Shown: positions 42,648-59,282, numbered from the stretch's first letter. The stretch: DNA of 64,000 bases from IMGVR_UViG_3300043411_000942:62001-126000, one strand, 5' to 3'. The notes: generated by a model not told the origin, from the letters alone. Program-made: numbers and translations.

Positions 42648-43880
42648 TCACGAGATGCCCAAGTATCGCATAGCTACTCGCGTCGTTAGGGGTTCGGAGA
42701 ACTTACTCCCAAGTTCCACCTCAACCTGAGCTTCAAGGGCTTGGGGGTTCAAGGTAGGGTTTGCGAGTAGTTGTTGGCGTGCCACCTGGAGTACTACGTT
42801 TCTCTCTTTCGGGGGAATCGAGTACTTGGCGAACAGCCTCTGTTGGTCAACAGGAGGCTTCTTGAGAGCCTCTACAAGAGCTACACCGTCTGAGGGGGGT
42901 AGCGCAAGAAGAAGCACCCTCAGTCGCTGCTGAGCAGCTCTATCGAGGAATGATAGAGGGGTTCGGATAACCCAACCAAGGTCAAGCAAGTCCAGCAACA
43001 GCTCAGCTTGCTTGTCATTCACATTCCTGCCAAGGGCCGCAGCAAAACCTGGCTCTGCCTCCAACATCTCCTTGATAGCGTCCGACAACCCCAACTGCAC
43101 TAGCAGCTCAACGCTCTTCCTTGGGGCAGGTCCCCCCAGGATATCCCCTACGAGGATTGAGCGCACAGCATCCCACGGCATTTTCTTGAGGCTTGGAGCA
43201 TTCTTTCGAATGCTGGCTACCATGTCCGGAGGAATCTTGAATCCGTACTTCGCTACGAACTTGATTGCACGTAGCATTCGGGTGGGGTCGTCTGAGAAGG
43301 TCTTGTCTGGATTCACCGGGGTCTTGAGCAACCTCTCTTCGAGGTGCTGCTTCCCTAGTCCCGTGAGGTCCAAAACCTCAGCTCGATCTGGACCGTGCTC
43401 AAGATCCAGTAAGCGCCACAACAGCGTGTTGAAGGTGAACTCACGCCGCTTGAGGTCCTCTTCGATGGTCGCAGGTTCCACCATGTGGGGCTTGTAGCCC
43501 TTACCACCCTCTCCGCCATAACTCTCCTTACGAGCGTTGGCAATCTCGATTACCTCGCCCTTTAGGTCATGACCGTCAAGGATCCAAGATTCCGAGATAG
43601 AGAGGATTGCGACCCCGTACTGATTGGTCGTCAGGTTGCATCGAGCGGGAATGAACTCCGAAACCTTCTTGGCAAACCAATCCGAGTCTCGGCCCTTCCC
43701 AGCAGCAACGCTGTCAAATACAACGTCGATGTCCTTGATGGGCTCCTTGAGGATCCAGTTTCGGACTGCCCCGCCTACAACGTAGACGTTCTCTGCAACA
43801 CCCAAGGATCGTGCCACCTTGGACAGGAACTTCATCAGGGCGACAGATCGATCGTGTAGGGAAGATGCGGTAATCATCAT
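42648..43880 (-). CDS. cca: class II tRNA nucleotidyltransferase (CCA-adding / poly(A) polymerase family)
   Basis: YVVGGAVRN, KDIDVV, EDLKRREFTFN, FSDDPTRMLRAIKF; no HD domain; C-terminal RVAMRY. Confidence 0.88.
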   Translation of the reverse strand: MMITASSLHDRSVALMKFLSKVARSLGVAENVYVVGGAVRNWILKEPIKDIDVVFDSVAAGKGRDSDWFAKKVSEFIPARCNLTTNQYGVAILSISESWILDGHDLKGEVIEIANARKESYGGEGGKGYKPHMVEPATIEEDLKRREFTFNTLLWRLLDLEHGPDRAEVLDLTGLGKQHLEERLLKTPVNPDKTFSDDPTRMLRAIKFVAKYGFKIPPDMVASIRKNAPSLKKMPWDAVRSILVGDILGGPAPRKSVELLVQLGLSDAIKEMLEAEPGFAAALGRNVNDKQAELLLDLLDLGWVIRTPLSFLDRAAQQRLRVLLLALPPSDGVALVEALKKPPVDQQRLFAKYSIPPKERNVVLQVARQQLLANPTLNPQALEAQVEVELGSKFSEPLTTRVAMRYLGIS

Positions 43881-43912
43881 CGTAGTTCCAAGCTTGTGAG
43901 TTAGAGCAGAGG

Positions 43913-44176
43913 CTACCGAAACTGGTAGGAGAAAACCTCTCCCTCCTCCTCTAAGAGTCTCTTATAGTACTTAATTTGCTTTTCGACCCCTTGTACAGGG
44001 CACCCCTTGAAGTGCTTACCTGCTACACTCAAGGCTGGGTCGGTAATCCCACACTGCTTACATTTCCAGTAGGGGTTACCCTTACCGCTTCGAACGTGGT
44101 TCACATCCAAAAAGTATTGAAGGTCTGTTATACGAGACCTCAACCGAACACTTCTGGGGATGTGGTTCTGTCTCAT
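43913..44176 (-). CDS. Zn-finger hypothetical protein
   Basis: ATG behind promoter 44186-44213; CKQCG..HFKGC. Confidence 0.65.
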   Translation of the reverse strand: MRQNHIPRSVRLRSRITDLQYFLDVNHVRSGKGNPYWKCKQCGITDPALSVAGKHFKGCPVQGVEKQIKYYKRLLEEEGEVFSYQFR

Positions 44177-44215
44177 ATGGTACACCCTACGAAAGGTAAC
44201 GGTGTAACTTAACCG

Positions 44216-44542
44216 ATGGCTCTAAGAATTCCACCAGTAACTCAACTAATTCGAGAGTTCCTAGCTGAAAACCCAGGCTCTACCGCCACTCAAGTTGCTA
44301 ACGGTATTGGACTAAAGTCCGCCAGCATCTCGTCTAAACTTACAGCTCAAGTTAACGAGGGGAAGCTGATCCGTGTAGCTGGAGAAGGGGTACGTGGAGG
44401 GTATGGGTACTATCTACCCCCCCCACGTATCCGCCTTCTAGTCCCCCGTACCCTACTAGGTGGGACAGACTTTTCAGCGCTGACTTTGAACAAAGTCCCA
44501 GTCACTCTGAGCATCCGCCATCGTCATCCCAACGATAGCTGA
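44216..44542 (+). CDS. winged-HTH protein (C8 tract, C-terminus uncertain)
   Basis: IREFLAENPGSTATQVA..ISSKL..GKLIR; GGTGTA-N9-ATG. Confidence 0.7.
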   Translation: MALRIPPVTQLIREFLAENPGSTATQVANGIGLKSASISSKLTAQVNEGKLIRVAGEGVRGGYGYYLPPPRIRLLVPRTLLGGTDFSALTLNKVPVTLSIRHRHPNDS

Positions 44543-44822
44543 CTCGAAGAAGTGCTCGTTCTTGCGCTCAGCCTCCATCTCAGCGCTCTCGGGCTTCGTC
44601 TCCGGGTGGAAGATCTCCCGGTAGTACTGCTTCGTGGCCTCTCGCTGGCTCTCAAGCGTCCCAGGGGGGCACTTCGTCACGGAGGCGCTCACCACCCCAT
44701 CAACCTCCTGGACCTTGCCGTTCTTGACGGAACGGCAGTAGGACTTCGCAAGAGTCTCCGTGGGGAAGGTTGCGGAACCGGTGGAGCCATTCTTCTGAGT
44801 GAACGTAACGCGGAAGGCCATG
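44474..44822 (-). CDS. hypothetical protein
   Basis: ATG 44822 (MAFRVTF); promoter 44844-44872. Confidence 0.65.
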
Positions 44823-44871
44823 TGGACACCTCTTTCAAGTCTCCCTACGTAAGTCACGGCTGACGAGTTAA

Positions 44872-45195
44872 CTACTTTTTAGAACCCAGATCAAAACCAA
44901 GCCTCAGTAGATGCAACACGAGCCACTCTGCATCCGCCCATTGGACCTTGGTCTCGATAGCTGTAAGTTGAGGTGCGAGACCAACGCGAAGATCTCCTAC
45001 CTGTAAGTAGTTGTAGCTTCGATCCTCAGAGCGACGGACCACTGCTGAGGCTACGTCCCGCAGGGGAAATGGTTCGTTTGGGGTTAGAAACGACTGGAGG
45101 CTCTTTAGAGCCTGGTCTCGTTCGGGGGAGGGCTCAGACCCTGGGGATCCCTCGGCAGTAAGGGTGGAGATGAGGATTTCTAGTTCTTTACGCAT
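44872..45195 (-). CDS. hypothetical protein
   Basis: GGTGTA-N10-ATG. Confidence 0.55.
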   Translation of the reverse strand: MRKELEILISTLTAEGSPGSEPSPERDQALKSLQSFLTPNEPFPLRDVASAVVRRSEDRSYNYLQVGDLRVGLAPQLTAIETKVQWADAEWLVLHLLRLGFDLGSKK

Positions 45196-45248
45196 CCTAA
45201 CCTTATACACCGGTTAAGTTTGCAGCGAGGCCTTACGTAAGGGTACAC

Positions 45249-45548
45249 ATGACCCCCCAAGACGAGCCTGAGTACGCTTCGGTTGAAGCTTTGGCAGAAT
45301 TTCTTATGGACGACAATCGAGACAGTTTCTCGGTTGAGGATGTCATCAAGCTCGCGGAACGTACCCAAGGCTCCAACCTCAAGATCATTCACGAGTTGAA
45401 GGCCTACGGTCTGAAAATGGTAGCAAGGCAGCCAGTGAGGGTCGTTCGAGGCTTCAAGTCGAACTCCCATGATCGTTGGACTGCCTACCCATCTCATGGC
45501 GGATCAGGTTGGGAACAAATTACCGGGTGTGCGGGTAAGCCTGGGTGA
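45249..45548 (+). CDS. hypothetical protein
   Basis: ATG behind promoter 45213-45241. Confidence 0.72.
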   Translation: MTPQDEPEYASVEALAEFLMDDNRDSFSVEDVIKLAERTQGSNLKIIHELKAYGLKMVARQPVRVVRGFKSNSHDRWTAYPSHGGSGWEQITGCAGKPG

Positions 45549-45602
45549 TTAGATTTCATCCTTTTACTATTGACCGCTACACCTAAGGAGGTACAATGGT
45601 GG

Positions 45603-46286
45603 ATGCCTCTCAAAGACCCAGTCAAGCGCAAAAAGTACCTTCAAGAGTATAGAGCAAAAAGGCAGGCGGACGCCCCCATTATCCTATGTGGTTGTGGGTG
45701 CGGTACCTCGATCTACTCAGCCGATGGGAACGGAGTGCAAAGAGGGTTTGCATTTGGTCATAAAACTCCTCTCCCGGCTGATCACATCGCGAAACGAATT
45801 GCCAATGCAACTCTAATTCAGTGCGGGTGCGGGTGCGGAGAAACACTTCGCGACCGTAACAAACACGGAAACAAGCAATTGTATATCTATGGTCACGTTG
45901 CAAACAAGCAGTATGTGACGATTGCCCCACCGATTTCGTTACTGGCTCGCTCTGGAGGGGCTAAGCAGGTAAACCTTCGAGGCTTAAAGTGGGCTCGTAA
46001 GATTACGATACTAACCTACTACAGCGGAGGTCAGCCAACGTGCTCTTGTTGTGGGGAGACAGACCCTATTTTCCTAGCTTTAGATCACCTAGACGGTGGC
46101 GGCAACATGCACCGTAAGGCCACTAACACGAAGGGTGGGAGTGGTACTTACAATTGGATAGTAAAAGCGGGGTTCCCGCCTGGATTTAGAGTTCTTTGTC
46201 ACAACTGTAACATGGCATTTGGTGCTTACGGTTACTGCCCGCACTCTCCTCCGATACTAGATGGAGTCGAACAGGCAAACGGCTAG
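45603..46286 (+). CDS. HNH-type endonuclease with CGCGCG Zn repeats
   Basis: two CGCGCG modules; CSCCGE..LALDH..VLCHNCN. Confidence 0.78.
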   Translation: MPLKDPVKRKKYLQEYRAKRQADAPIILCGCGCGTSIYSADGNGVQRGFAFGHKTPLPADHIAKRIANATLIQCGCGCGETLRDRNKHGNKQLYIYGHVANKQYVTIAPPISLLARSGGAKQVNLRGLKWARKITILTYYSGGQPTCSCCGETDPIFLALDHLDGGGNMHRKATNTKGGSGTYNWIVKAGFPPGFRVLCHNCNMAFGAYGYCPHSPPILDGVEQANG

Positions 46287-46288
46287 CA

Positions 46289-46480: not shown

Positions 46481-46533
46481 CCTTAGTTTTCTCGTAGGTC
46501 TCCAAGTAAAGACGGATGAATTCTGGTGGTACT

Positions 46534-46551
46534 GGTGTAGCCATAGAGATG
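46534..46551 (+). promoter_or_regulatory. class-2 motif GGTGTA-N9-ATG
   Basis: same geometry at starts 14414(+), 20586(-), 34372(-), 38573(+), 44216(+); N10 at 45195(-); also 518-523 before the ncRNA. Confidence 0.6.
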
Positions 46552-47505
46552 CTCCATCCTAACCCTAAGATGCTGTTACGCATAGCCCAAGGTGACGCCT
46601 TTGGTATGGCGTGTGAATTTCGAACCGACAACCTGAAGGCAGCGTTGGAGTTCGATCGGTATATCCGTCATCCTGAGTGGGGTCCGGAAGCAGGTCATTA
46701 CACCGATGACACTCAGATGTCTATCGCAGTAGCCGAGAGCCTTATCCACCCACAAGGCCGTCGTCCTCCGAAATACGCACGCCCTGAAGACCTAACAAAA
46801 GAGGCTTTTGCTGAGGCCTTCGTCCAAGCATACAAGAGAGACCCACGACCTGGGTATGCGGTAAAGTTCCAGGCCTTCCTAGACTCAGTAAGCTCTGGTG
46901 CCGAATTCCTCTTGAAGATAAACCCGGAGTCAGATAAGAACGGTGCCGCAATGCGCTCCGTTCCGCTTGGCGTTATCTTACACGAACCCAATCTACTAGA
47001 GGTAGCTGCAACGCAAGCGAGCCTGACTCACAACACAGAGGGAGGTATTACCTCTTCTCAGATGGTAGCCCTTGCATCTAGGTTCGCCTTGTACGAGAGT
47101 GCTCCACTCACGGAGATTTTCGATTACATTGGAGACTGGCTACACCTGAGCAACCTACGGTGGGAGGGCGGTCCTGTAGTAGGACCTAACCTGGGGATGC
47201 TCACTGCAAGGGCAGCTATTACCCTAGTAATTGGTGAACCTAACTTACTGAGTATTGCAAAGAAGGCTCTTATCTGGGGTGGAGACACTGACTCTGTGCT
47301 AGCTATCGCCTGGGGTATTGCTAGTGCTCGAAAGGACGGAGCGGAGCTTCCCGACTTCTTCCATAGAGACCTAGAGAACGGACCTTACGGTCGAGACTAC
47401 CTAGCAGGGTTAGGTAGAGCCTTGATGGGTTACTTTGCTCCACCTGGGTTTGCTGCTGAGTTTGTTGTAAGCAAGAACGCGGTCTTGCCCCTCAAGAAGG
47501 ACTGA
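46549..47505 (+). CDS. ADP-ribosylglycohydrolase (ARH/DraG family)
   Basis: GDAFG, YTDDTQMS, NGAAMRSVP, GGDTDS; GGTGTA-N9-ATG. Confidence 0.92.
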   Translation: MLHPNPKMLLRIAQGDAFGMACEFRTDNLKAALEFDRYIRHPEWGPEAGHYTDDTQMSIAVAESLIHPQGRRPPKYARPEDLTKEAFAEAFVQAYKRDPRPGYAVKFQAFLDSVSSGAEFLLKINPESDKNGAAMRSVPLGVILHEPNLLEVAATQASLTHNTEGGITSSQMVALASRFALYESAPLTEIFDYIGDWLHLSNLRWEGGPVVGPNLGMLTARAAITLVIGEPNLLSIAKKALIWGGDTDSVLAIAWGIASARKDGAELPDFFHRDLENGPYGRDYLAGLGRALMGYFAPPGFAAEFVVSKNAVLPLKKD

Positions 47506-47506
47506 G

Positions 47507-48112
47507 ATGAGTATACTTACCGGTAGCAAGATCAAGAGTGAAGTTGAGGCTGGTAACATCCGTATTACCCCATACTCAGAGGACCAACTCAACCCAGCTA
47601 GCTATGACCTTACCCTTGGGGATGAGCTTAGGGTCTACAAGGATTGGGTAGGGTACAATGAGCACGCTAGCCCCCCAAGGGCTGGTCAGGACATGTTCCC
47701 TTGCGCCAAGGTGTGTGATGTCAAGCAAGAGCTTGAAACGGTAAGTTTCCAGATCCCACCTACGGGATGGGTACTAAGACCAGGTATCGGCTACCTCTTA
47801 CACACAGTAGAGCAAGTGTGGACACGGAATTACGTGCCAATTGTAGATGGGAAGTCTTCGATTGGTAGGCTATTTGTCCTCATCCACTTCACGGCTGGAT
47901 TCGGGGACCCAAACTTTGACGGCCAGTACACTCTAGAGGTGTCTGCTCTCCACCCAGTACGAATCTACCCAGGTATGCGTATAGGTCAGATTCGATTCCA
48001 TACGGTTGAGGGGGAGTTGGACCGACCGTATGAAGGTAACTACAAGGAGGGTACCGCGAGGGGAGCTGTAGCCTCAAGGTCGTGGAATCAATTCCCTAAG
48101 AAAGATGACTAA
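47507..48112 (+). CDS. dcd: dCTP deaminase
   Basis: QLNPASYDLTLG, GKSSIGR, AGFGDPNFDGQYTLE, PGMRIGQI. Confidence 0.93.
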   Translation: MSILTGSKIKSEVEAGNIRITPYSEDQLNPASYDLTLGDELRVYKDWVGYNEHASPPRAGQDMFPCAKVCDVKQELETVSFQIPPTGWVLRPGIGYLLHTVEQVWTRNYVPIVDGKSSIGRLFVLIHFTAGFGDPNFDGQYTLEVSALHPVRIYPGMRIGQIRFHTVEGELDRPYEGNYKEGTARGAVASRSWNQFPKKDD

Positions 48113-48635
48113 CATGCTCATGCCCAAGCGCTTGCCTATCCGATACTACCCAGATGCCATCCTCCACCAGAAGTGTGCACCCGTAACCGAGGTTACGGAG
48201 AGCGTGAAGCAGCTAGCTTCCGACATGCTTCTTACGATGATGCAGTGTCGAGGGCTGGGGTTGGCTGCACCTCAAGTTGGGGTGCCTATTCGACTTTTCG
48301 TTGTTGACGTAGAGTGGCCAGATGGCGTAGAGAACTCCACCTCCTACATATTCATCAACCCTACTTTGAGGTTGCTTGAACCCACTGTAAAGTCTGTCGA
48401 GGGCTGCATCTCGTTCCCAGGAGAACGATTTGAGCTGACTCGTGCAAGTCGCATCGAGGTTGACGCGCTAGACCTCGATGGTAAGCCCTTCACTCTCGAA
48501 GCAGAAGGGCTCCTTGCTGTAGCTATCCAACACGAGTACGACCACCTAGAGGGAAAGACTGGAGCGGAAAGTCTTTCCTGGCTAAAGCGGAACCTACTAC
48601 GTAAGAAGGTCGAGAAGCTTACGAAGCGTGGCTAA
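48105..48635 (+). CDS. def: peptide deformylase
   Basis: GLGLAAPQVG, EGCIS, QHEYDHLEG. Confidence 0.96.
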   Translation: MTNMLMPKRLPIRYYPDAILHQKCAPVTEVTESVKQLASDMLLTMMQCRGLGLAAPQVGVPIRLFVVDVEWPDGVENSTSYIFINPTLRLLEPTVKSVEGCISFPGERFELTRASRIEVDALDLDGKPFTLEAEGLLAVAIQHEYDHLEGKTGAESLSWLKRNLLRKKVEKLTKRG

Positions 48636-49312
48636 TCCAGCATCACGCAGCGAGTACTGCCGTTGTGCCCGTGAATCTTCATGAGAGTCTCTAAGTTAGC
48701 GTAGTTCCCAGTGCTTGCGTGCTCGGTCAACCAAGACAGTACGCAAGCACCTGTGGAGAACTGAACGCCCTCTGCGATCACGCCTACCCCACTGATCCCG
48801 CTATGGTCGTGGTCTCTAAGTAGGTAGAACCGCTTAGACTTTGCTTCGGGTAGTGGTGAGATTGTCTGCGGGTAACTGTACCTTTGAACTTGAATTGGAG
48901 CAGAGCCTTCTTCAGGCTTGAACCGCTGGACTACCAGCGTGTTGGCAGACCGCACACCTAAGGACTCGTATATGATACGTTGAGCCAAGTCGGCATCGAA
49001 GTCCTTACAGGAGAATGCATCCAAGGCGAAGTACTTCTGAAGGGGCCAGGCGTGCAAGCTCAAGTGAGAGGTGGAAATCACCTGAACGGTAGAAATCCCC
49101 CCCTCATCCTCGAAGTTACCCGTGAGCTTCACTCTAGCAAGTATCGCAGGGTCTACGGGTACTTCGTAGACCTGAATCTTATCCAGAGCTTGCATACCTA
49201 AGGCTTCGACTATGCTTGCGAATAGTCGAGTTAGGTGTTCCTTCGTGAACACAGCTGAGTCTTCCACTCTAGCGTCCATGATCAAGTGGAGCCCAGCCGA
49301 ATCATTTCCCAT
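48632..49312 (-). CDS. speD: S-adenosylmethionine decarboxylase proenzyme fused to a small phage domain
   Basis: GLHLIMD, ISTSHLSLHAWP, DAFSCKDFD; C-terminal RDHDHSGISGVGVIAEGVQF..HGHNG. Confidence 0.85.
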   Translation of the reverse strand: MGNDSAGLHLIMDARVEDSAVFTKEHLTRLFASIVEALGMQALDKIQVYEVPVDPAILARVKLTGNFEDEGGISTVQVISTSHLSLHAWPLQKYFALDAFSCKDFDADLAQRIIYESLGVRSANTLVVQRFKPEEGSAPIQVQRYSYPQTISPLPEAKSKRFYLLRDHDHSGISGVGVIAEGVQFSTGACVLSWLTEHASTGNYANLETLMKIHGHNGSTRCVMLD

Positions 49313-49362
49313 TGCCTACCTCACCTCGTTAGCAATGGACCTGAGATAAAACCATTATGGTT

Positions 49363-50202
49363 TCAGAACTCTGTACCGAGAGTTGGAACCCAAAGGTCAG
49401 AGGTGTTTTCCCACGTAATGTAATCTGGAGTCAGTAGTGCGAACCCACCATCCCTCCAGTGCTTACCCCATGAATTTTTCACGAGGAAATTGCCGTCTAC
49501 GTACCCTACGATCATCATAGCGTGCCCACCTGCGGTAGCTCCCTTCGGGGGGTCTACGATCGAGGGTCCAAGGCGCTGCAAAAAGGGGTGGTCGACAAGG
49601 GTGCCGAAAACAACGGGGTGCTTTGCTTGCAGTGCCGACTTGATTGCCTCAAGTCGGTCATCTCCAGTCTCCCTGATTCGGTAGTAGGAGTGGATGCGAT
49701 GACCTACCGCCTGACGCATAGCCTTGATGCTAGGGGCCGTGTAGACCTTAGACTCGTCGTAGGCCCAAATGTTCTCGTCGCAGACTCCAAAGCGACTGAG
49801 CACCTCAAAGCAATTTCGGATGTAGGTCCCCTCATCCTTGTCAATGTCACCCTGGCCATCCCCGTCATCGTCCATCATCCCACGAGCTAGAGCGTAGATG
49901 AATAGACGAGAGACCTGAATCGTAGGGCGAGGGCTTCGCTTCTCAGAGACAGCTAGAGTAGCCTCTCGGATAGCGTTAAGTAACTCAATGCTATCTGCTG
50001 TAGCGTTTCCCGCACAGGAGGACAGCCCGAACTGATTGGTCTCAGTGGTGAAGCTAGATAGGTCCACGTCCCCATCCGCCATCACTAGACTTGGCTTGAG
50101 GTTGGTGGTGAAGTCCAGGTCCTTAGCGAGCCAATCGAACTCGTTCCCATTCTCATCAATACCTACAGTAGGGTCTGGCTTATATCCGAATAGAGTGGTC
50201 AT
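49363..50202 (-). CDS. papain-like C1 cysteine peptidase
   Basis: NQFGLSSCAGNA, GGHAMMIVGY, VKNSWG. Confidence 0.9.
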   Translation of the reverse strand: MTTLFGYKPDPTVGIDENGNEFDWLAKDLDFTTNLKPSLVMADGDVDLSSFTTETNQFGLSSCAGNATADSIELLNAIREATLAVSEKRSPRPTIQVSRLFIYALARGMMDDDGDGQGDIDKDEGTYIRNCFEVLSRFGVCDENIWAYDESKVYTAPSIKAMRQAVGHRIHSYYRIRETGDDRLEAIKSALQAKHPVVFGTLVDHPFLQRLGPSIVDPPKGATAGGHAMMIVGYVDGNFLVKNSWGKHWRDGGFALLTPDYITWENTSDLWVPTLGTEF

Positions 50203-50204
50203 GC

Positions 50205-51656: not shown

Positions 51657-51675
51657 CCAACACTGGAGATTAAGA

Positions 51676-52023: not shown

Positions 52024-53757
52024 CTATGTCGCTTTCCAATACAAGACCGGTAGTGGAGTCTCCACGTCTTCAGGGGTACTTACAGCTGCGAGTACTGATC
52101 GGAAACTCTCCACCTGATCTCGACTCATGTCCACTTCAAGTACATAGTGGGCAAACACCTCAGCGAACGCCTCATCAATGTTACTAGCTCCGTAGGTGGA
52201 GACGGGTGCCACTGGAGCGGGGTTGTTCTCGTAGCTCTCAAGCCAAGCTTTTGTAGCAGGGTCGTTCTTTGCTTTTTGATGTGCTTGCTCGTTGTGGGCT
52301 ACCACAGCTGAGTCTAGGTAGATGAGAGCCTCGGTCACCAGGGTACGCACCAAGACTAAGGCCTCTGCTGTCCATGTGGCCTTCGTTTCGTCCGTAACCC
52401 CGTAGAAGTCATCTACGTGCTCGTGGAGCTTCGCACGAGTACGGTAAACCTCGTCTTTAGCCTTGTCTACTTCTGGGGTCGTATCGAACTCTGGAGTGGT
52501 TATAGCGTCAACAATCTCGTTACTGAATTGCCGACTCAGGTCCGTAAGTTTACTCTCATCCCCTAGTTCGCTGTACTTCATTACCGCGCTCTCTAGGTTA
52601 CTACCCCAGGTGTCGACAGCTTTACGGTAAGGTTGGATCGTACTCTCACGTACCAGCTTAACCTCAACTGGTTTCGAGGGTCTTGATACCGTGTGCGTCT
52701 TTACTAGAGACTCGAACTTTGCTCGCTGCGAAGTTCGCATTTGTTTGAACCAGTACCTGTGTCCAAGCTCATGTACGACAAGCTCAACGATAAAGGAAGA
52801 TGGTCGACTGAAAATTGAGACAGTGTCCTCCCCAATAACGTAGTGACCGCCAACCCCCCCTCCGTTATTGGAGTTCACCCCTCCGCACTCACTGCACTGG
52901 ATGAACACGGTACCGTACCAAGCCTTTGCGAACCCCTTAGCCTTCAACTTGTTGAAGGCTGCGTCCAAATGGCGTACGTACTTCTTGATGTCGTCTGGGA
53001 GTAGGGTAGTGTCGTCTACGACAACTTTCATTCCGTACAGGTCGAACTCCCTGAATCCAGCAGGGGAGTTCTCGATAGCCTTCTGAGAGTAGTTCGCCTC
53101 CAACATTACAAGTATACGGTCGACCCAGTCGGTGAAGTCCAACTCAAGCTTGGTTCGACTTAGAGCCTTCAATGCTGACGCCTCAAAGTTGATGGACTCT
53201 AGGAACGCGTACTTACGATGGTATTGACCCTCATCAGTAAGGGCCTCCATTTGACCTGGAGTTGCAGCCTTCAAGGTCCTAGCTACAAGCCGATCAACCA
53301 TCTTCTCGTCGATATACCAAGAGTACCTGAACAAGTACCCTATGGTCTTGGCTGACGCTTTGATCTTGCCGAAGATAGCGTTTATCGCGTACCATCGAAG
53401 GTAATCTACAGGGTCGTTGAAGTTGACGTAACTATGGTCTTTGGGTAGCTTCTGGGCCACTGCTTCAATGTAGCGTCTGATGGACGCTACTCGGTCTTTG
53501 ATGGACTCCAACGCCTGAGCGGCTATGGGCCCAGAGCCAACCTGCTTCCGAAAGTCATTTAGGAAGTCGTCGAAGAAGAAGATGAGCTTCTCGTCGATGA
53601 TGTTCGGCCAGTCGTTGACGTCGCTCGACAGAGACTTTTGGAGACGTTGCTTAAGGTCTTTGCTACGCTCCTTGAACCAGGATTGAGGTAGCGTAGCCGC
53701 TACCTTGACGTAGTACCTAGTGGCAACTCGAAGGGCAATACTCACACCTGGGATCAT
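52024..53757 (-). CDS. large zincin metallopeptidase-domain protein with N-terminal RVATRY motif
   Basis: VHELGHRYW ... STYGASNIDEAFAE (lethal-factor-like zincin). Confidence 0.8.
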   Translation of the reverse strand: MIPGVSIALRVATRYYVKVAATLPQSWFKERSKDLKQRLQKSLSSDVNDWPNIIDEKLIFFFDDFLNDFRKQVGSGPIAAQALESIKDRVASIRRYIEAVAQKLPKDHSYVNFNDPVDYLRWYAINAIFGKIKASAKTIGYLFRYSWYIDEKMVDRLVARTLKAATPGQMEALTDEGQYHRKYAFLESINFEASALKALSRTKLELDFTDWVDRILVMLEANYSQKAIENSPAGFREFDLYGMKVVVDDTTLLPDDIKKYVRHLDAAFNKLKAKGFAKAWYGTVFIQCSECGGVNSNNGGGVGGHYVIGEDTVSIFSRPSSFIVELVVHELGHRYWFKQMRTSQRAKFESLVKTHTVSRPSKPVEVKLVRESTIQPYRKAVDTWGSNLESAVMKYSELGDESKLTDLSRQFSNEIVDAITTPEFDTTPEVDKAKDEVYRTRAKLHEHVDDFYGVTDETKATWTAEALVLVRTLVTEALIYLDSAVVAHNEQAHQKAKNDPATKAWLESYENNPAPVAPVSTYGASNIDEAFAEVFAHYVLEVDMSRDQVESFRSVLAAVSTPEDVETPLPVLYWKAT

Positions 53758-53769
53758 TCAACAAGAAGG

Positions 53770-54291: not shown

Positions 54292-54309
54292 CCTAGGTAG
54301 GACACCAAT

Positions 54310-55581
54310 TCAGTGACTGTCTGCCAAGAATCTACCCAAAACTCGCGCCTCAATCTGACTTGAGGCCACCTTTACAGCTCCAGGCATAGCCGTGTCGAGC
54401 CACCAGCGTACCTTCTCGTGGACCGCCCTAGGGCCGTAGGCTACGAGTAACCCAATCGCCTCGCAGAAGGCTTCCTCTGGATTCTTGTCGGCATAACCAG
54501 TGATAGGAGTCTTCGGAACTCGGATCTTACGCTCCCCCCTATCGTAGAGCTTTTGGAAGTCCTCCTTGGTGTTGAGGTGATCATCCTTTATCGACTCGAC
54601 TTGGAGCGCTAAGATAGGGTCAGAGTCTCCTAGGTACTTCGTGAAATCGAAGGACCAAGCGCCTTCAGGCCACTTATCCAATAACTCCTTGAGGTCAAGG
54701 TCCCCGTAGTCCCCTTTGATCGTCTGGTACCAAAAGTCCTGAGCCTCTTTGGCGAGGTAGGACTTCCAAATGTGGTGCCCCATCTCGTGTGCCATTACAT
54801 GAGCTACCCAAGAGGGTCCTTTGGATACCGAGGACATGTACAGGTTAATGTACCCCGCAGAGTTGTACTCGCCTCCCTTGTCTAAGGTAGACTTGAACTC
54901 ACACACTACCGGAAGTTGCTTCCTGAGGAGGATTGGAGCTACCATCCCTGCCCGCTTACGGTACAGACTCAAACCAGCCTTAAGAGTTTCAAGGTCTTGC
55001 TGGTTGTGCTCATCGTCTGGCTTAAAGCCATTCATGACAAGCTTGAAGCCCTCTATGGTGGCATTCTCTACAGTAGGAAGGTCGGTCTCCAAGTCACCGT
55101 GGACCCGCTGAAGGTACTCAATAACATCCTTCATCGCCTTCCAGAAGACTTGGGCTTTACGTTGCACCCTAACCTTCCATTGAGGGTACTCTCGCTCAAA
55201 GTTGACGAACCTAGCCCCCTCCGTGTAGTACTCGTCCTGATGCCCAACGGGGAGTCTCAGATCTGATGAGAATTCCCAAGCAACTGATCTCAACTTATCG
55301 TTGATATAGGAGGCGTGATTAGCTAGCTTGGGGTCCTCTTTCAGACTCTTGTTCAGGAACGCCTCGAAGAAGACCGCATCAAACCTATTCCGGTAGATTT
55401 GGAACGCCTGCTTGACGGTGTGGGCCGTCTTGTAGTCTTTTATCTTGGGGAGGTTCTTCAGGAGCGTGAGGAAGTCCTTTCGAAGGCCCTCTACCCAAGC
55501 CAAGTCCAACTTATGCGTAGCTGCAAACCGTACAACCACGTTTGAGGTAAGCGTATCCATCGTAGTGGAACTAAGCATCAA
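54310..55581 (-). CDS. zincin metallopeptidase-domain protein with terminal VVRF and RVLGRF motifs
   Basis: AHEMGHHIW ... TGYADKNPEEAFCE. Confidence 0.8.
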   Translation of the reverse strand: MMLSSTTMDTLTSNVVVRFAATHKLDLAWVEGLRKDFLTLLKNLPKIKDYKTAHTVKQAFQIYRNRFDAVFFEAFLNKSLKEDPKLANHASYINDKLRSVAWEFSSDLRLPVGHQDEYYTEGARFVNFEREYPQWKVRVQRKAQVFWKAMKDVIEYLQRVHGDLETDLPTVENATIEGFKLVMNGFKPDDEHNQQDLETLKAGLSLYRKRAGMVAPILLRKQLPVVCEFKSTLDKGGEYNSAGYINLYMSSVSKGPSWVAHVMAHEMGHHIWKSYLAKEAQDFWYQTIKGDYGDLDLKELLDKWPEGAWSFDFTKYLGDSDPILALQVESIKDDHLNTKEDFQKLYDRGERKIRVPKTPITGYADKNPEEAFCEAIGLLVAYGPRAVHEKVRWWLDTAMPGAVKVASSQIEARVLGRFLADSH

Positions 55582-55584
55582 AAG

Positions 55585-55803: not shown

Positions 55804-56028
55804 TTACCAAGTAACCCCAGACCGGTCAATGTGTTGACCCTCGTGGCCCATTAGGTATTGACAGATATCGAAACAACCCCGTACAAAGAAGTGGGACTCG
55901 TGAGCCTTAACTACATGAACTGCATTGCAAATCTTGAAGTGTCTAGAGCACTGGGGACAGAACCCTGTACGAGGGTGATCCTTAGGCTCCACTAGAGTTA
56001 AGGTATGCAAACACTGAGGACAATTCAC
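55804..56028 (-). CDS. Zn-ribbon protein
   Basis: CPQC..FCPQC..C..GHEGQH. Confidence 0.55.
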   Translation of the reverse strand: MNCPQCLHTLTLVEPKDHPRTGFCPQCSRHFKICNAVHVVKAHESHFFVRGCFDICQYLMGHEGQHIDRSGVTW

Positions 56029-56039
56029 ACAAAACCTCG

Positions 56040-57122
56040 TTAACGTAGGAACATGGGAGGTGGTTTGGGGGCCTCACCCACCTGAGGTAGTTCCTGCTTT
56101 TCCCAACTATCAATCAGACCGTCGAGTAGTTTGATGTCCTTCTTCAAATCCGAGATAAGACCCGTGGTAGTTTGAATTCGATCCTTGACTCGGTCATCCC
56201 ACTCTCGCTGACCTAGGTCCTCAAGCGTTAGCTTTCTCCCCTGCGTTGTGTACAACACAAGTACCCTGCCAGCTTGGAGGTCACGTAGAGAAGACTCGGA
56301 GTCCCGCACGGAGTCATGCAAGACTTTCACAAGGTGCTGCGTGCCCTTAGGGCTCAGCTCAAACGGCTGGTAGCCAACACCAAGACACCTACCCTGCACT
56401 TGCCCCCAACCTGGACGCTCGTACCCGTGTAGGACGACCATGTAGTCATCCCCTTGACGTTTGAGCTTGATGTTCCGAAAGCAGCAAGGACACGTACCCG
56501 TGTTCTCACGAGTGCGAGGCTTTGACTCCTCACGCTCCCGCTCATACGTGCTCACTCCAAGTGCATTGGACACCTGAGTTAGGAAACTCGTACTCTCTCG
56601 CAACCACTTGCGAATCTCGTAGTATGGTATCTTCTTAGGATCCGAATACTGAACGTAGTAACTCCTACTTGGTAGTAGCTCAAAGACAGCGCCTTCAGGT
56701 GATGTAAATCGAAGCCCGTTTGCACCTACCCACTCAAGGAAGGAGTAGCCGGTTAGGTCGAAGTTAAAGCCCTCGGAGGTAGGAGCAGTTACATCCATCG
56801 TGTAATGCTTCATCGCTTGCGGGCTGGACGGTAGAGACCTTACCTCTAAGTCCTTAGTTAGCTCCCATCTTGCTTGAACCGTTAACGGATTAGAGTCGGT
56901 TTCCAGATTTGGAGCATTAGGATCTTGCGGGTACCCGTGTAGTTGAACCAAGCCGACGAAAGGCTCTACAGTCCAGCCTCCAAGGTACTGAAGAACTTCA
57001 AGTAGTTGCTTCATCGTAATGCTGGAGTCAGCTCCCTTACGGAGCTTGACAAGAAGCGCCTTTACCTTCTCCTCGCTAAGAGCGGCAGCGTAGCGGGAGA
57101 CTACATTTTCTATTAGAGCCAT
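56040..57122 (-). CDS. hypothetical protein with N-terminal NVVSRY motif and Zn-binding C-domain
   Basis: GTCPCCFR..HGYERPGWG..C.G. Confidence 0.75.
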   Translation of the reverse strand: MALIENVVSRYAAALSEEKVKALLVKLRKGADSSITMKQLLEVLQYLGGWTVEPFVGLVQLHGYPQDPNAPNLETDSNPLTVQARWELTKDLEVRSLPSSPQAMKHYTMDVTAPTSEGFNFDLTGYSFLEWVGANGLRFTSPEGAVFELLPSRSYYVQYSDPKKIPYYEIRKWLRESTSFLTQVSNALGVSTYEREREESKPRTRENTGTCPCCFRNIKLKRQGDDYMVVLHGYERPGWGQVQGRCLGVGYQPFELSPKGTQHLVKVLHDSVRDSESSLRDLQAGRVLVLYTTQGRKLTLEDLGQREWDDRVKDRIQTTTGLISDLKKDIKLLDGLIDSWEKQELPQVGEAPKPPPMFLR

Positions 57123-57193
57123 ACACTTAAGGGTTAGGTATCAAATGACTAGGAGACCACACTACGAGTAGGTAACACACTTATACCCGTAGT

Positions 57194-57859
57194 GTGGGTA
57201 TGGGTAAACTAAACGACTTGACCGGTCAAGTATTTGACAGACTGACTGTCCTACAGAAGGTGCCAGCTCCTCCCACTAAGCCAGGACGTAGGCAAAGAAC
57301 AGAGGCATTTTGGGAGTGTGGTTGTTCTTGCGGCAATTCGAAAGTCGTAGCAGGTCCCAATCTTCGCTCTGGTAATACTCGTTCTTGTGGTTGTGCCCAC
57401 AAAGAGCAGTTAGCTGAGCGAAATCGAATTCTACTTACTCTAGACCCATGGGAGTCCGACATGCGACTATACATTCGGAGACTGGGCTACCGTAAGTTAC
57501 GAGCTAAGTTGGGTTCCAACCAATTCCAAGTGTTAGCCAAAACCCCACAACAGGAAGTACACCCTGGGAATGCAGAATCTTGGGCCCTCACTCTAAGTAG
57601 CTACAAACGATTAGTTTTAGGTGTTTGCTACTACTGTGGTAGGGCTCCAGCTCAACCTGTGCATGGAGCTGCTAGTGCTCTTCTACTTAAGAATGGGATC
57701 GATCGCGTAGACAACACTAAGGGGTACGAGGAATCAAATTGCGTGTCTTGTTGTAAATCATGCAACAAGGAGAAGCGGGCTCAATCGTTAACTGTTTTCG
57801 TTGAAAACACTCGTAGGCGTTACCAATGGCTCAAGTCTAAGGGGTTAATCACCAGTTGA
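57194..57859 (+). CDS. freestanding HNH homing endonuclease
   Basis: DLTGQVFDRLTV, CGCSCGN, SCGC; CYYCG..NGIDRVDN.KGY..NCVSCCKSCN. Confidence 0.85.
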   Translation: MGMGKLNDLTGQVFDRLTVLQKVPAPPTKPGRRQRTEAFWECGCSCGNSKVVAGPNLRSGNTRSCGCAHKEQLAERNRILLTLDPWESDMRLYIRRLGYRKLRAKLGSNQFQVLAKTPQQEVHPGNAESWALTLSSYKRLVLGVCYYCGRAPAQPVHGAASALLLKNGIDRVDNTKGYEESNCVSCCKSCNKEKRAQSLTVFVENTRRRYQWLKSKGLITS

Positions 57860-58454
57860 AGTCACCCTCTGCCTTCTTGTTTCTAAGACGAGCAAGCGTT
57901 AACGGCCCGTATGCCATCATAGCATATACACCACCAGCCCAACGTTTTTTGTCATAGTCGCTACCAGTAGTAAAGGCCCGTTCACGGCGCATCTTAATGT
58001 TGAAGGCCGCTGCATCAATCATTTTCTGGCGATAGGGCTCGTAGATAGGGGCGTGAGCTAACACCCATGTTGCATAATCGACTTCCCCCTCATCATAAAA
58101 TGGCTCGACGGACGGAAACTGGCTCAGTGAGCCATGAACCATCTCGTGAGTCAACTTCTCCAAGGTCTGTCCTGGATTACCCTCTACAGAGGAGCACAGA
58201 CTAATCTGCCCACTCACCATGTCGAAGCTCGCTGTAGCTCCACTCATGTGCATCCCATCTGGGAGCTTAAGTATTCTAGGTTGAGGTTCCGTCCCGAAGG
58301 GACCTAGAGCCTCAACCAGAAAACTGTAAATGCGTGGAGCCCAGTCGACCACAAACTGGTCCCAATCCGAGTTGAACACTTGGCATTGAAATGCCTTGCT
58401 CGACGTCTTCATGGAGGCCGACTTGAGGTACCTCTGAGCTTCAGGAGGGAGCAT
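57849..58454 (-). CDS. HEXXH metallopeptidase-like protein
   Basis: LTHEMVH followed by DEG. Confidence 0.7.
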   Translation of the reverse strand: MLPPEAQRYLKSASMKTSSKAFQCQVFNSDWDQFVVDWAPRIYSFLVEALGPFGTEPQPRILKLPDGMHMSGATASFDMVSGQISLCSSVEGNPGQTLEKLTHEMVHGSLSQFPSVEPFYDEGEVDYATWVLAHAPIYEPYRQKMIDAAAFNIKMRRERAFTTGSDYDKKRWAGGVYAMMAYGPLTLARLRNKKAEGDFNW

Positions 58455-58457
58455 CCC

Positions 58458-59282
58458 TTAGACTTCAGCTCTCTCGTTCTTGACGTCGAAGTGCTTGCGT
58501 AGTACCGACTTGATTTGGTCCTTGTACTTCAACCAAGCTGGGTGCGACATCGGGTTGTTCTTTAGGAACGGGATCATTTGGTCTCGAACAATCTCGGCGT
58601 CCGTATACCCCTGTAGGAGCAAGTCAAAGTAAAGGTCCAGGTCTGGAGTGACCCTGGGGTTTACCTTCCTAGCCAATTCATCTCGGATGTTGTCCAAGTC
58701 ACTCTCTAGAAGGTACTTGTCGAGGTGGTCCCAAGCCCCTGGGTCCTCAATGACCCTCTCAACGCCTTCCAGGTCCGTCATGGAATCCGTGATACTCTTG
58801 TCTTCATCCCCTCTGGTGTCATGCCTAAACTGGTCGATAGCTAGCATGTTGAGGGCCGTAAGGATATAGCTTTCTGCTCTCTTTAGAGGTTGACCTGATA
58901 GGTTCCGTAGGGAGTCAGGCTTAGCTAGAAACTTGAGCATTAGCTCCGTCATCAGGTCTTCTGCTCGGTTCGGATCGCGATGCTTCATGAGTAGCATCTT
59001 GTAAGCCTTCGAGCCAAAGTTGGCGCCGTAACCACTAGGGATCTTACGGTCCATCTCTCGTGCGTTCTGAGGCTTGAAGTTCTCAGCAGGTTGATCCTTG
59101 ATGGGTGGAAGTCCCTCCACCCCGTTCATCAAGAATAACCCGTAGATAACTCTCCCGAACCCAGCAGCGGGCCCAGCTGCTAGCTTCACTAGAAGGTTAG
59201 CCAGCCTATATCCCCATGGAAGGCTGGCATATACCTTACGACCTAACTCACTAGCGACTCTTACTAAGGCGTGTGTATCCAT
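58458..59282 (-). CDS. ECF-like RNA polymerase sigma factor with N-terminal RVAS motif
   Basis: AEDLMTELMLKF..SYILTALNMLAIDQFR (sigma2-like); LLLQGYTDAEI (sigma4-like). Confidence 0.65.
   Translation of the reverse strand: MDTHALVRVASELGRKVYASLPWGYRLANLLVKLAAGPAAGFGRVIYGLFLMNGVEGLPPIKDQPAENFKPQNAREMDRKIPSGYGANFGSKAYKMLLMKHRDPNRAEDLMTELMLKFLAKPDSLRNLSGQPLKRAESYILTALNMLAIDQFRHDTRGDEDKSITDSMTDLEGVERVIEDPGAWDHLDKYLLESDLDNIRDELARKVNPRVTPDLDLYFDLLLQGYTDAEIVRDQMIPFLKNNPMSHPAWLKYKDQIKSVLRKHFDVKNERAEV

What the first reader, a model, noticed from the sequence alone, without database searches (positions are those of the whole stretch)
42648..59282. Short terminal RV(A/V/L)xR(Y/F) tag on unrelated proteins: candidate virion-loading signal
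Seen: RVATRY (N-terminus, 577-aa zincin), NVVVRF and RVLGRF (N- and C-termini, 423-aa zincin), NVVSRY (N-terminus, 360-aa protein), RVASEL (N-terminus, sigma-like 58458-59282) and RVAMRY (extreme C-terminus, CCA enzyme). Each sits outside the catalytic domain and is often followed by AA. None of these genes has a class-1 promoter that I could find. Established: T4 internal proteins use a short capsid-targeting sequence, and jumbo phages inject enzymes. Inference: a portable packaging or processing tag loading proteases, a sigma factor and a tRNA-repair enzyme into the head for injection, which could start class-1 transcription and attack host defence proteins immediately.
Basis: inference. Interest (0 to 1): 0.75.

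Follow-up and report, generated by a model that had tools for sequence, protein, structure and literature searches.

The report
Portable terminal tags on huge-phage enzymes
A clade of huge phages puts the same ~12-residue peptide (consensus L-a-x-R-V-A-x-R-F/Y-L), or an alternative Y-S/D-Y-D-R-R peptide, on the N- or C-terminal end of a dozen unrelated enzymes per genome; it is most likely an address label, probably for loading them into the phage head, but its receptor and destination are not shown.

Summary
In the 233-kb genome, [RN]V[AVL]xR[YF] occurs 8 times against 0.44 expected, and 7 copies lie within 20 residues of a protein end (P about 2e-7).

- **Conservation:** the tag recurs in related huge-phage contigs, with 51 copies in four genomes, 37 of them N-terminal. 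It moves between N- and C-termini among orthologues (CCA enzyme, both zincins), sits at domain junctions in fusion proteins and is sometimes doubled.
- **Second tag:** Y[SD]YDRR fills the same slot in orthologues. It occurs three times in this genome, always at an extreme terminus.
- **Carriers:** two zincin peptidases, a CCA/poly(A)-polymerase-type enzyme, type IB topoisomerase, an ART-PolyVal ADP-ribosyltransferase, J-domain proteins, a giant protein encoded after the portal gene and a small basic protein next to terminase. This resembles an unbundled "polyvalent protein" effector set.
- **Structure:** AlphaFold2 places the tags as short low-confidence helices on flexible linkers outside the folded cores.
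- **Correction:** the sigma-like protein's RVASEL is not a tag.
- **Untested:** virion loading is the best reading (about 0.45). One complex prediction with the capsid protein gave no answer, no cultured relative carries the tag, and the CCA gene lies in a class-1 operon.

The parts
42651..42692 (-). Type-A tag at the C-terminus of the CCA/poly(A)-polymerase-family enzyme (PLTTRVAMRYLGIS, then stop)
   Evidence: Translation. Tag HMM 10.3 bits. Orthologues carry the tag at the C- or the N-terminus.
42648..43880 (-). Carrier: 410-aa tRNA nucleotidyltransferase / poly(A) polymerase family protein
   Evidence: Pfam PolyA_pol 7.6e-14 and PolyA_pol_RNAbd 1.7e-5.
53701..53742 (-). Type-A tag at the N-terminus of the 577-aa zincin (SIALRVATRYYVKV)
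   Evidence: Orthologues have it at the N-terminus, the C-terminus or both.
52024..53757 (-). Carrier: 577-aa HExxH zincin-like protein
   Evidence: The HELGH motif is visible in the translation. No Pfam or PHROG family.
55513..55554 (-). Type-A tag at the N-terminus of the 423-aa zincin (TLTSNVVVRFAATH)
   Evidence: AF2 helix 9-18 with pLDDT about 50, joined to the core by coil 19-26.
54316..54357 (-). Type-A tag at the C-terminus of the 423-aa zincin (QIEARVLGRFLADS)
   Evidence: AF2 helix 408-422 with pLDDT 56-70, after coil 399-407.
54310..55581 (-). Carrier: 423-aa zincin peptidase (HEMGH). In 12 of the 120 listed homologues it is fused to a type IB topoisomerase domain.
   Evidence: Weak Pfam M64 hit. 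Fold matches only to zincin peptidases. Fusions in both orders.
57078..57116 (-). Type-A tag at the N-terminus of the 360-aa protein (LIENVVSRYAAAL)
   Evidence: AF2 helix 3-10 with pLDDT <50 before the core, which starts at residue 17. 43 of 98 homologues are tagged, some with tandem tags.
56040..57122 (-). Carrier: 360-aa protein of unknown fold with conserved Cys/His residues C211, C214, H232, C246
   Evidence: PHROG 28271/17208, function unknown. Confident AF2 model with no known fold. Invariant columns.
59244..59261 (-). RVASEL in the sigma-like protein: NOT a member of the tag family
   Evidence: Below noise for the tag HMM. Orthologues have HRRVFASL, LRRTVYASL and IRRMIWASL at this place, with no R-V-A-x-R-F/Y.
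44186..44213 (-). Class-1 promoter-like site (GTTAAG-N14-TTCGTAGG) directly before the 90-aa ORF that precedes the CCA gene by 32 bp
   Evidence: The regex has 61 sites in the genome and 0 in the reversed control.

Best explanation
The peptide is a portable docking tag (a short linear motif). It is probably a short helix held on a flexible linker at a protein end. A clade of huge phages related to LR745208 appends it to a set of otherwise unrelated enzymes so that one phage-encoded receptor can collect them. That clade is only distantly related to Tunturiibacter phage Tunturi_5 and Bacillus phage G.

The most likely destination is the inside of the assembling head. On that reading the tagged enzymes travel with the DNA and act in the next host cell before any phage gene is expressed. 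The cargo would be zincin peptidases, an ADP-ribosyltransferase, a CCA/poly(A)-polymerase-type enzyme, topoisomerase IB and J-domain proteins. A second tag, Y-[SD]-Y-D-R-R at the extreme terminus, does the same job.

Shown: the motif exists, it is biased to termini, it is portable, it is interchangeable with type B, it lies outside the folded cores, and the carriers are what is listed.

Inferred: that it binds a receptor, that the receptor is phage-encoded, and that the destination is the prohead.
For: 1. **Non-random and terminal.** 8 hits against 0.44 expected, 7 of them terminal. In four genomes there are 51 HMM hits: 37 N-terminal, 6 C-terminal, 8 internal.
2. **Portable.** The same orthologue carries the tag at the N-terminus in one phage and the C-terminus in another. 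This holds for the CCA enzyme and the 577-aa zincin and for the 423-aa zincin. Tandem double tags occur in the 360-aa family.
3. **Interchangeable.** Type A and type B replace each other in the same slot of orthologues. Y.YDRR occurs only three times in all six frames of this genome, always at an extreme terminus. It is likewise terminal in G001 and G002.
4. **Outside the folds.** In AF2 models with mean pLDDT 89-91 the tags are separate short helices with pLDDT 43-70, on coil linkers.
5. **Carriers resemble packaged or injected effectors.** They include ART-PolyVal, zincin peptidases and a Pol-beta-type nucleotidyltransferase. These are hallmark domains of polyvalent proteins, which are predicted to be packaged in capsids (PMC5512222). 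In relatives the same domains are fused, with the tag kept at the junction: TopIB-zincin in both orders, and an unknown domain fused to ART.
6. **Three always-tagged families lie in the packaging block.** These are the 132-aa basic protein two genes before TerL, TopIB right after TerL, and the giant protein right after the portal gene.
8. **Not on replisome or self-assembling virion proteins.** None of the core replication proteins or major structural proteins carries a tag.
9. **Tag presence tracks capsid-protein similarity, in a small sample.** Tags occur where the capsid protein is 83-98% identical. They are absent in Tunturi_5 (47%) and phage G (37%).
Against: - There is no direct evidence of virion association. 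No cultured phage carries the tag, so no virion proteome applies.
- The one complex prediction (capsid protein x2 plus the 577-aa N-terminal 30 residues) returned 'no answer', ipSAE 0.01.
- Most carriers in the window lie among non-structural genes. The CCA gene is the second gene of an operon headed by a class-1 promoter. That promoter type is found only in the 27-151 kb block of small ORFs and tRNAs, plus one site at 3 kb, and never in the structural block. If class 1 is early, this fits poorly with loading during head assembly.
- No tag-like sequence was found on the predicted scaffold or protease, so the tag does not obviously mimic a scaffold handle.
- The carrier list also fits a purely intracellular hub.
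Confidence: 0.45

Rival explanations
1. The tag docks its carriers onto a phage-encoded hub inside the infected cell, not in the virion. Candidates are the phage GroEL-like chaperonin, a replication or transcription factory, or a scaffold that gathers effector enzymes.
For: - The tag has the properties of a generic short linear motif: it is terminal, sits on a linker, is portable and is sometimes tandem.
- A GroEL homologue and a small neighbouring protein are core genes in all four genomes.
- J-domain proteins carry the tag.
- The CCA gene is in a class-1 operon.
Against: - No candidate hub was identified.
- The replisome proteins are untagged, which argues against a clamp or replisome hub.
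- It does not explain why three always-tagged families sit in the terminase-portal block.
- It does not explain why the carriers match the polyvalent-protein repertoire.
Confidence: 0.22
2. The tag is a terminal degron or a processing site. A host or phage protease (a ClpXP-type unfoldase, the prohead protease, or the tagged zincins themselves) recognises it to time the destruction of the carrier or to cut polyprotein-like fusions apart.
For: - Bacterial degrons occur at either terminus.
- Type B sits at the extreme terminus.
- Tags lie at domain junctions of fusion proteins, where cutting would release the domains.
- Zincin domains in polyvalent proteins are proposed to act autoproteolytically (PMC5512222).
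Against: - Type A lies 3-20 residues from the end and about 70-80 residues in on the post-portal protein, so it does not depend on a free terminus.
- It is predicted helical rather than extended.
- It is absent from the proteins a prohead protease must cut, namely the scaffold candidate and the capsid protein.
- Removing 3-10 C-terminal residues would achieve little.
- The motif is specific to a phage clade rather than to a host.
Confidence: 0.13
3. The tag is an amphipathic membrane-targeting helix, like the terminal helices of MinD or FtsA, that brings the enzymes to the inner membrane.
For: It has basic and hydrophobic residues, a terminal position and a predicted helix. The helical hydrophobic moment is 0.3-0.8.
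Against: - Membrane-targeting helices are defined by amphipathicity, not by near-invariant R, V, R and F/Y at fixed positions across about 40 instances.
- Type B (YSYDRR) can replace it and is not amphipathic.
- Several tags have weak moments.
Confidence: 0.05
4. There is no shared function. The resemblance comes from chance or from an N-terminal segment inherited among paralogues.
For: - The 360-aa and 355-aa proteins are paralogues.
- The regex was defined post hoc.
Against: - There is an 18-fold excess over shuffles, with P about 2e-7 for the terminal bias.
- It replicates in independent genomes against a reversed-pattern control.
- The tag is present on a CCA enzyme, TopIB, zincins and J-domain proteins that share no other similarity.
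- It changes terminus within families.
- Its codons differ at synonymous sites.
Confidence: 0.02

Closest known systems
Phage T4 capsid-targeting sequence (CTS) of the internal proteins and Alt
   Same: - A short terminal peptide shared by otherwise unrelated proteins.
- It is sufficient in T4 to load them, and foreign proteins, into the prohead.
- The T4 cargo includes an ADP-ribosyltransferase.
- (PMC9024508 and PMC5512222, as read.)
   Different: - The T4 CTS is N-terminal only and is removed by the prohead protease.
- Here the tag works from either end or from a junction.
- No cleavage motif follows it.
- Two interchangeable sequence types exist.
- Loading itself is not shown.
Phage P1 DarB N-terminal packaging signal
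   Same: - An N-terminal stretch of at most 30 residues directs a large injected anti-restriction protein, and a reporter, into the head (PMC9024508).
- DarB is a polyvalent protein.
   Different: - The P1 Dar proteins share no consensus signal (same paper).
- Here one consensus is shared by about 8-16 proteins per genome and across a whole clade.
Encapsulin cargo-loading peptides and bacterial-microcompartment encapsulation peptides (from my own knowledge)
   Same: - Short conserved peptides at the N- or C-terminus of unrelated enzymes, joined by flexible linkers.
- They dock cargo to the luminal face of a protein shell. For encapsulins that shell has the HK97 fold, like this phage's capsid protein.
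   Different: - Those shells are not viruses and nothing is injected.
- Cargo genes there usually sit next to the shell gene, whereas here most are dispersed.
- Binding to the capsid protein could not be shown.
Polyvalent proteins of phages and conjugative elements (Iyer et al. 2017, PMC5512222)
   Same: - The same domain repertoire: zincin MPTase, ART, Pol-beta nucleotidyltransferase.
- The same predicted logic: effectors delivered with the DNA.
- Relatives have true fusions.
   Different: - In this genome the domains are separate proteins, each with its own tag.
- TopIB and the J-domain were not found as polyvalent-protein domains in my term search of that paper. 'DnaJ' has 0 occurrences. 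'Topoisomerase' has 1 occurrence, which I did not read.
Terminal sliding-clamp-binding motifs, such as those of T4 gp43, gp33 and gp55 (from my own knowledge)
   Same: A short terminal hydrophobic motif shared by unrelated proteins that binds one hub.
   Different: The replisome proteins of this phage carry no tag, and the carriers are not DNA-replication or late-transcription factors.

Membership tests
T4-type capsid-targeting sequence | Short peptide shared by unrelated proteins at the N-terminus only | tested here: not met
   The tag is shared by unrelated proteins. However, 6 of 51 copies are C-terminal, and others lie at domain junctions or about 70-80 residues in.
T4-type capsid-targeting sequence | Followed by a prohead-protease cleavage site and removed at maturation | tested here: inconclusive
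   The positions after the tag are L/A-rich, with no conserved acidic cleavage motif. Cleavage itself cannot be tested here.
T4-type capsid-targeting sequence | Necessary and sufficient to load a protein into proheads | not testable with these tools
   This needs virion proteomics or a tag-reporter assay. No cultured tag-bearing phage was found.
Encapsulin / microcompartment cargo-loading peptide | Conserved short peptide at either terminus of unrelated enzymes, on a flexible linker | tested here: met
   The tags have low pLDDT and are separated from the cores by coil.
Encapsulin / microcompartment cargo-loading peptide | Binds the luminal face of the shell (HK97-fold) protein | tested here: inconclusive
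   Complex prediction with capsid protein x2 plus the tag gave ipSAE 0.01, with the verdict 'no answer'.
Polyvalent proteins (PMC5512222) | Two to fifteen effector domains in one polypeptide | tested here: not met
   The carriers in this genome are single-domain proteins. Fusions exist only in relatives: 12 TopIB-zincin fusions, and a 697-aa protein fused to ART in G001.
Polyvalent proteins (PMC5512222) | Domain repertoire of zincin MPTase, ART, nucleotidyltransferase and similar | tested here: met
   ART-PolyVal 4.8e-9. HExxH zincins. PolyA_pol head domain. Repertoire as described.
Polyvalent proteins (PMC5512222) | Encoded beside portal/terminase packaging genes | tested here: inconclusive
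   This is true for three carrier families: the 132-aa protein, TopIB and the post-portal giant protein. It is not true for the zincins, the CCA enzyme, the 360-aa protein or the ART.
Sliding-clamp-binding terminal motif | Present on DNA polymerase and other replisome proteins | tested here: not met
   No tag occurs in any core family of the replication block at 155-184 kb.
Terminal degron (ssrA/ClpX type) | Recognition depends on the free extreme terminus | tested here: inconclusive
   Type A lies 3-20 residues from the end or is internal. Type B is at the extreme end: M-x-YSYDRR at the N-terminus, or YDYDRR followed by the stop codon.

The most novel reading that the evidence does not exclude
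Huge phages of this clade use a two-letter peptide address code: a helical L-a-x-R-V-A-x-R-F/Y tag and a Y-S/D-Y-D-R-R tag. Either tag can be used at either protein end. The code loads an 'unbundled polyvalent protein' arsenal into the capsid for injection. That arsenal comprises topoisomerase IB, an ADP-ribosyltransferase, zincin peptidases, a tRNA-end or poly(A)-adding enzyme, and J-domain proteins that could recruit host DnaK to refold ejected cargo. This would be the first consensus capsid-targeting signal recognisable from sequence alone, so the injected proteome of uncultured phages could be read directly from metagenomes.
Probability: 0.4. Interest if true: 0.85.

Novelty: new variant of a known kind. 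Interest (0 to 1): 0.72.

Why it matters
Which proteins a phage injects along with its DNA decides the first minutes of infection, yet for uncultured huge phages this is unknown. The known capsid-targeting signals (T4, P1) have no transferable consensus.

A sequence-recognisable tag would have three uses:
- It would let one list the candidate injected proteome of hundreds of metagenomic huge phages.
- It would point to new anti-defence enzymes, such as the zincins, the ART, the 360-aa family of unknown fold, and the recurrent TopIB-zincin pairing.
- It would give a small handle for loading foreign proteins into large capsids.

If the destination turns out to be something other than the head, the tag still defines a hub-and-spoke interaction network specific to a very abundant phage clade.

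Tried and rejected
I left those sequences out.
- **Cultured relatives with virion proteomes.** Tunturiibacter phage Tunturi_5 and Bacillus phage G share the capsid-protein family. They show no excess of either tag over the reversed-pattern control, and the few hits are not in ORFs.
- **Late-promoter search.** A TAGATGTAGA-like word lies upstream of three or four structural-block genes. It is too rare to define a class and is not upstream of the tagged genes.
- **Phyletic profile for a type-B receptor** (present in G000-G002, absent in G004). It gave six families, including the long prohead protease. The G004 protease region has no called gene in my crude annotation, so I do not trust the profile.
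- **Function of the carriers.** Pfam, PHROGs, PDB sequence search, Foldseek and the ESM Atlas gave nothing for the 360-aa, 577-aa, 132-aa and 1209-aa proteins.
- **Sigma-like protein as a carrier:** rejected.
- **DNA-level motif:** rejected, because the codons vary.
- **Literature.** The motif strings, and phrases for capsid-targeting peptides in huge or jumbo phages, found nothing relevant.

Full report
**What the window is.** The window is bases 62,001-126,000 of a single 232,937-bp virus contig with about 52% G+C.
- The genome has about 45 tRNA genes and a tmRNA at 127-153 kb.
- It encodes a GroEL homologue, ribonucleotide reductase and a clamp loader.
- It has a head and packaging block: large terminase at 190,390-193,749, portal at 197,447-199,234, prohead protease at 203,753-205,414, and a 290-aa HK97-type capsid protein at 207,498-208,370.
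- The nearest GenBank records are the uncultured 485-kb phage LR745208.1 (capsid protein 83% identical), Tunturiibacter phage Tunturi_5 (47%) and Bacillus phage G (37%).
- The capsid protein is extraordinarily conserved in metagenomes. There are 2,033 hits, and the best 120 clusters are 86-98% identical, on contigs up to 620 kb. Other proteins of the same relatives are 30-60% identical.

**Checking the observation.** All six strings are present as described.
- I made my own simple gene call for the whole genome. It uses codon-usage scoring with greedy non-overlapping selection and gives 360 ORFs.
- In it, [RN]V[AVL].R[YF] occurs 8 times in 64,303 residues.
- Five copies start at residues 6-14, two end 4-5 residues before the C-terminus, and one is at residue 80 of a 1209-aa protein.
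- Shuffling each protein gives 0.44 hits on average (maximum 2) and 0.07 terminal hits. Given the carriers' lengths, P(>=7 of 8 terminal) is 2e-7.
  - a 355-aa paralogue of the 360-aa protein (39% identical);
  - a 132-aa basic protein two genes upstream of the large terminase;
  - the 1209-aa protein encoded directly after the portal gene.
- A profile HMM built from 40 instances separates these eight (6.9-16.3 bits) from everything else in the proteome (<=4.1 bits).
- The consensus, numbered from the conserved Val at position 0, is: L/I/V at -4, small (mostly Ala) at -3, R at -1 (34/40), V at 0 (38/40), A/V/L at +1, R at +3 (39/40), F/Y at +4 (40/40), L/K/A at +5, and often Ala at +7.
- The sigma-like protein's RVASEL does not match. 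Its orthologues in three related genomes have a conserved N-terminal helix but no tag.

**Replication in other genomes.** Homologues of the tagged proteins in IMG/VR huge-phage contigs carry the same tag, and the tag moves.
- The CCA-type enzyme has it at the C-terminus here and in L019 (ERVVARFVARGGR). It is at the N-terminus in L023/24/37 (MIDLSKKVARRYLL) and L026/27, and near the C-terminus in L030.
- The 577-aa zincin family has it at the N-terminus, the C-terminus or both.
- A degenerate DNA pattern for R-V-[AV]-x-R-[FY] gave 52 hits in five related records, against 30 for the reversed control. Of the 30 places inspected, 13 lie in the first 25 residues and 4 in the last 10 residues of ORFs longer than 130 aa.
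- I fetched three relatives whole and applied the same gene caller and HMM. Counts are 8, 16, 12 and 15 type-A tags in G000, G001, G002 and G004. That is 51 in total: 37 N-terminal, 6 C-terminal and 8 internal. Several of the internal ones reflect over-long ORF starts or domain junctions.
- Among 120 homologues of the 423-aa zincin, 51 carry HMM-level tags: 36 at the N-terminus, 19 at the C-terminus and 13 at junctions.
- Among 98 homologues of the 360-aa protein, 43 carry tags, and several have two tags in tandem.
- Tunturi_5 and phage G show no excess. LR745208 has about three real tags.
- The tag codons vary freely at synonymous sites, so the selection acts on the peptide.

**A second tag.**
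- Many zincin-423 homologues that lack type A begin with M-x-Y-S-Y-D-R-R, or end with a similar string, in exactly the same slot before the conserved LDLAWVE core. There are 21 at the N-terminus and 3 at the C-terminus among the 120.
- In this genome Y.YDRR occurs three times in all six reading frames, each at an extreme terminus:
  - MSYDYDRRVA at the start of a 256-aa protein (genome 37,111-37,881);
  - MAYSYDRRVA at the start of a 133-aa protein (147,365-147,766);
  - ...KLAYDYDRR followed by the stop codon, on an 81-aa protein (149,218-149,463).
- The same holds in G001 and G002. The pattern is absent from G003-G007, LR745208 and Tunturi_5.
- Orthologous families swap the two types. In family 100, G001 has IISRIATRFLEA and G002 has MGYSYDRRMAAR. 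In family 243, G001 has MSYDYDRRASDE and G004 has LATKVAQRFAAD. The 423-aa zincin has type A in G000 and G004 and type B in G001.
- Interchangeability in one slot argues that both peptides serve the same general purpose.

**Anatomy.**
- The AlphaFold2 model of the 423-aa zincin (55-row alignment, mean pLDDT 89) has a confident core at residues 27-398. The N-terminal tag is helix 9-18 (pLDDT about 43-56) and the C-terminal tag is helix 408-422 (pLDDT about 56-70), each beyond a coil linker.
- The 360-aa protein (mean pLDDT 91) has the tag as helix 3-10 (pLDDT <50) before a core that starts at residue 17.
- The helix assignment itself has low confidence, and hydrophobic-moment values do not settle helix against strand.

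**Who carries the tags.** In this genome and its relatives:
- two distinct HExxH zincins (fold matches only to zincin peptidases);
- the CCA/poly(A)-polymerase-family enzyme, which in G001 also has an HD domain;
- type IB topoisomerase, canonical in G001 and G004 and degenerate (AVVAKY) here;
- an ART-PolyVal ADP-ribosyltransferase with a type-B tag;
- J-domain proteins and a SWIM-finger protein;
- the 360-aa family, which has a confident model but no known fold;
- a 129-137-aa basic protein, tagged in all four genomes and encoded two genes before the large terminase;
- the giant post-portal protein, whose tag sits at about residue 70-80 after a conserved, highly charged leader. It is RVAARF, RVARRF and RVLRRW in three genomes and degenerate in the fourth.

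Twelve of the 120 zincin-423 homologues are fused to TopIB, in both orders, and keep a tag at the junction. The ART is the C-terminal domain of a 697-aa fusion in G001, with YSYDRT at the junction.

No core replication protein and no major structural protein carries a tag. That covers capsid, portal, protease, decoration protein and the 421-aa scaffold candidate.

**Interpretation.**
- Zincin peptidases, ARTs and Pol-beta nucleotidyltransferases are signature domains of 'polyvalent proteins'. Phages are predicted to package these in the capsid and inject them. T4 Alt is the tested prototype of a packaged ART (PMC5512222).
- T4 internal proteins and P1 DarB enter the head through short N-terminal signals (PMC9024508).
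- The set found here looks like the same arsenal split into separate proteins, each with its own address peptide. This makes head loading the best-supported reading.
- A J-domain cargo would also make sense if ejected proteins must be refolded by host DnaK. That is inference only.
- The near-invariance of the tag across phages whose other proteins have diverged suggests an equally conserved receptor. The capsid protein fits that description. This is circumstantial, and the one complex prediction gave no answer.

**Against head loading.**
- There is no direct evidence.
- Most window carriers lie among non-structural genes.
- The class-1 promoter (GTTAAG, a spacer, then TACGTAGG about 7 nt before the ATG) has 61 regex sites in the genome and none in the reversed control. 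All but one lie at 27-151 kb. One of them heads the small ORF that lies 32 bp upstream of the CCA gene.
- If class 1 is early-only, that carrier would be made long before heads assemble.
- The main rival is an intracellular hub. A degron or processing site and a membrane-targeting helix are less likely, for the reasons given under each rival.

**Novelty.**
- The motif strings and the concept were not found in the searchable literature.
- Capsid-targeting and cargo-loading peptides are a known kind.
- The new features are a shared consensus across unrelated cargo, use at either terminus and at junctions, tandem copies, and two interchangeable sequence types.
- I therefore file it as a new variant of a known kind, on the assumption that the loading function is correct.

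**Limits.**
- The gene calls are my own and crude, and N-terminal distances depend on the choice of start codon.
- This contig may be incomplete. An IMG/VR contig with 94-99% protein identity across the three carrier genes compared is 379,936 bp long.
- The HMM was trained partly on the instances it then scores.

Noticed in passing
window 1-64000 and the whole genome; for example window 44186-44213 (-) and 60.5 kb (-): A strongly over-represented promoter-like element, GTTAAG-N14-20-(T)ACGTAGG, usually ends 7 nt before an ATG. The regex has 61 sites in the genome and none in the reversed control. All but one lie between 27 and 151 kb, in front of small ORFs and in the tRNA block.
   Followed up: partly
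outside the window: genome 127-153 kb (L005, L006): About 45 tRNA genes and a tmRNA (tag peptide ANDNAYATPALAAA) are clustered in one block, interleaved with class-1 sites.
   Followed up: no
homologues of window 54310-55581; for example P0141, P0220, P0232, P0235: The 423-aa zincin and type IB topoisomerase are fused in 12 of the 120 listed homologues, in both domain orders. This points to a functional link between the two enzymes. One possibility is a protease that removes covalently trapped topoisomerase.
   Followed up: partly
outside the window: genome 207498-208370 (L085:8498-9370): The 290-aa HK97-type capsid protein is 86-98% identical in more than 120 clusters already collapsed at 90% identity, and 83% identical in LR745208. 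Neighbouring head proteins are only 28-50% identical. That is unusually strong constraint on the shell protein.
   Followed up: no
outside the window: genome 194813-196993: Three tandem paralogues of about 172 aa lie between the TopIB and portal genes, and are conserved as a triplet in all four genomes compared. Their function is unknown. They are a candidate inner-head component and a possible tag receptor.
   Followed up: no
window 57194-57859 (+): A Cys-rich 221-aa ORF lies on the opposite strand and interrupts the leftward operon between the 201-aa zincin and the 360-aa protein. It looks like an inserted HNH-type homing endonuclease. I did not test this; Pfam gave no hit.
   Followed up: no
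window 46516-50202: A run of auxiliary genes:
- one I read as an ADP-ribosylglycohydrolase (46516-47505);
- one I read as a dCTP deaminase (47507-48112);
- one I read as a peptide deformylase (48105-48635);
- a 226-aa ORF (48632-49312);
- a papain-family C1 peptidase (49363-50202; Pfam 1.3e-9).

Only the last was tested. The others are read from the translations alone.
   Followed up: no
window 42433-42651 (-) and genome 7402-8079 (+), 228837-229427 (+): There are sub-threshold tag-like N-termini: NKVAKAYLEA on the 72-aa ORF just downstream of the CCA gene, LSIISNVVARWKK on a 225-aa protein, and LARNVVARVLEA on a 196-aa protein. A 225-aa G004 protein of the same length has a similar N-terminus with a canonical tag (SIIANVVSRYAAS), but it did not cluster with the own 225-aa protein. 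They may be degenerate members.
   Followed up: partly
outside the window: genome 206753, 217699, 149591: The word TAGATGTAGA lies 15-60 nt upstream of three genes, two of them in the structural block. It may be part of a late promoter, but there are too few copies to judge.
   Followed up: partly
whole contig compared with IMGVR_UViG_3300020049_006032: An IMG/VR contig with 94-99% protein identity across the three carrier genes compared is 379,936 bp long, against 232,937 bp here. This genome record may therefore be incomplete, and its tag census a lower bound.
   Followed up: no
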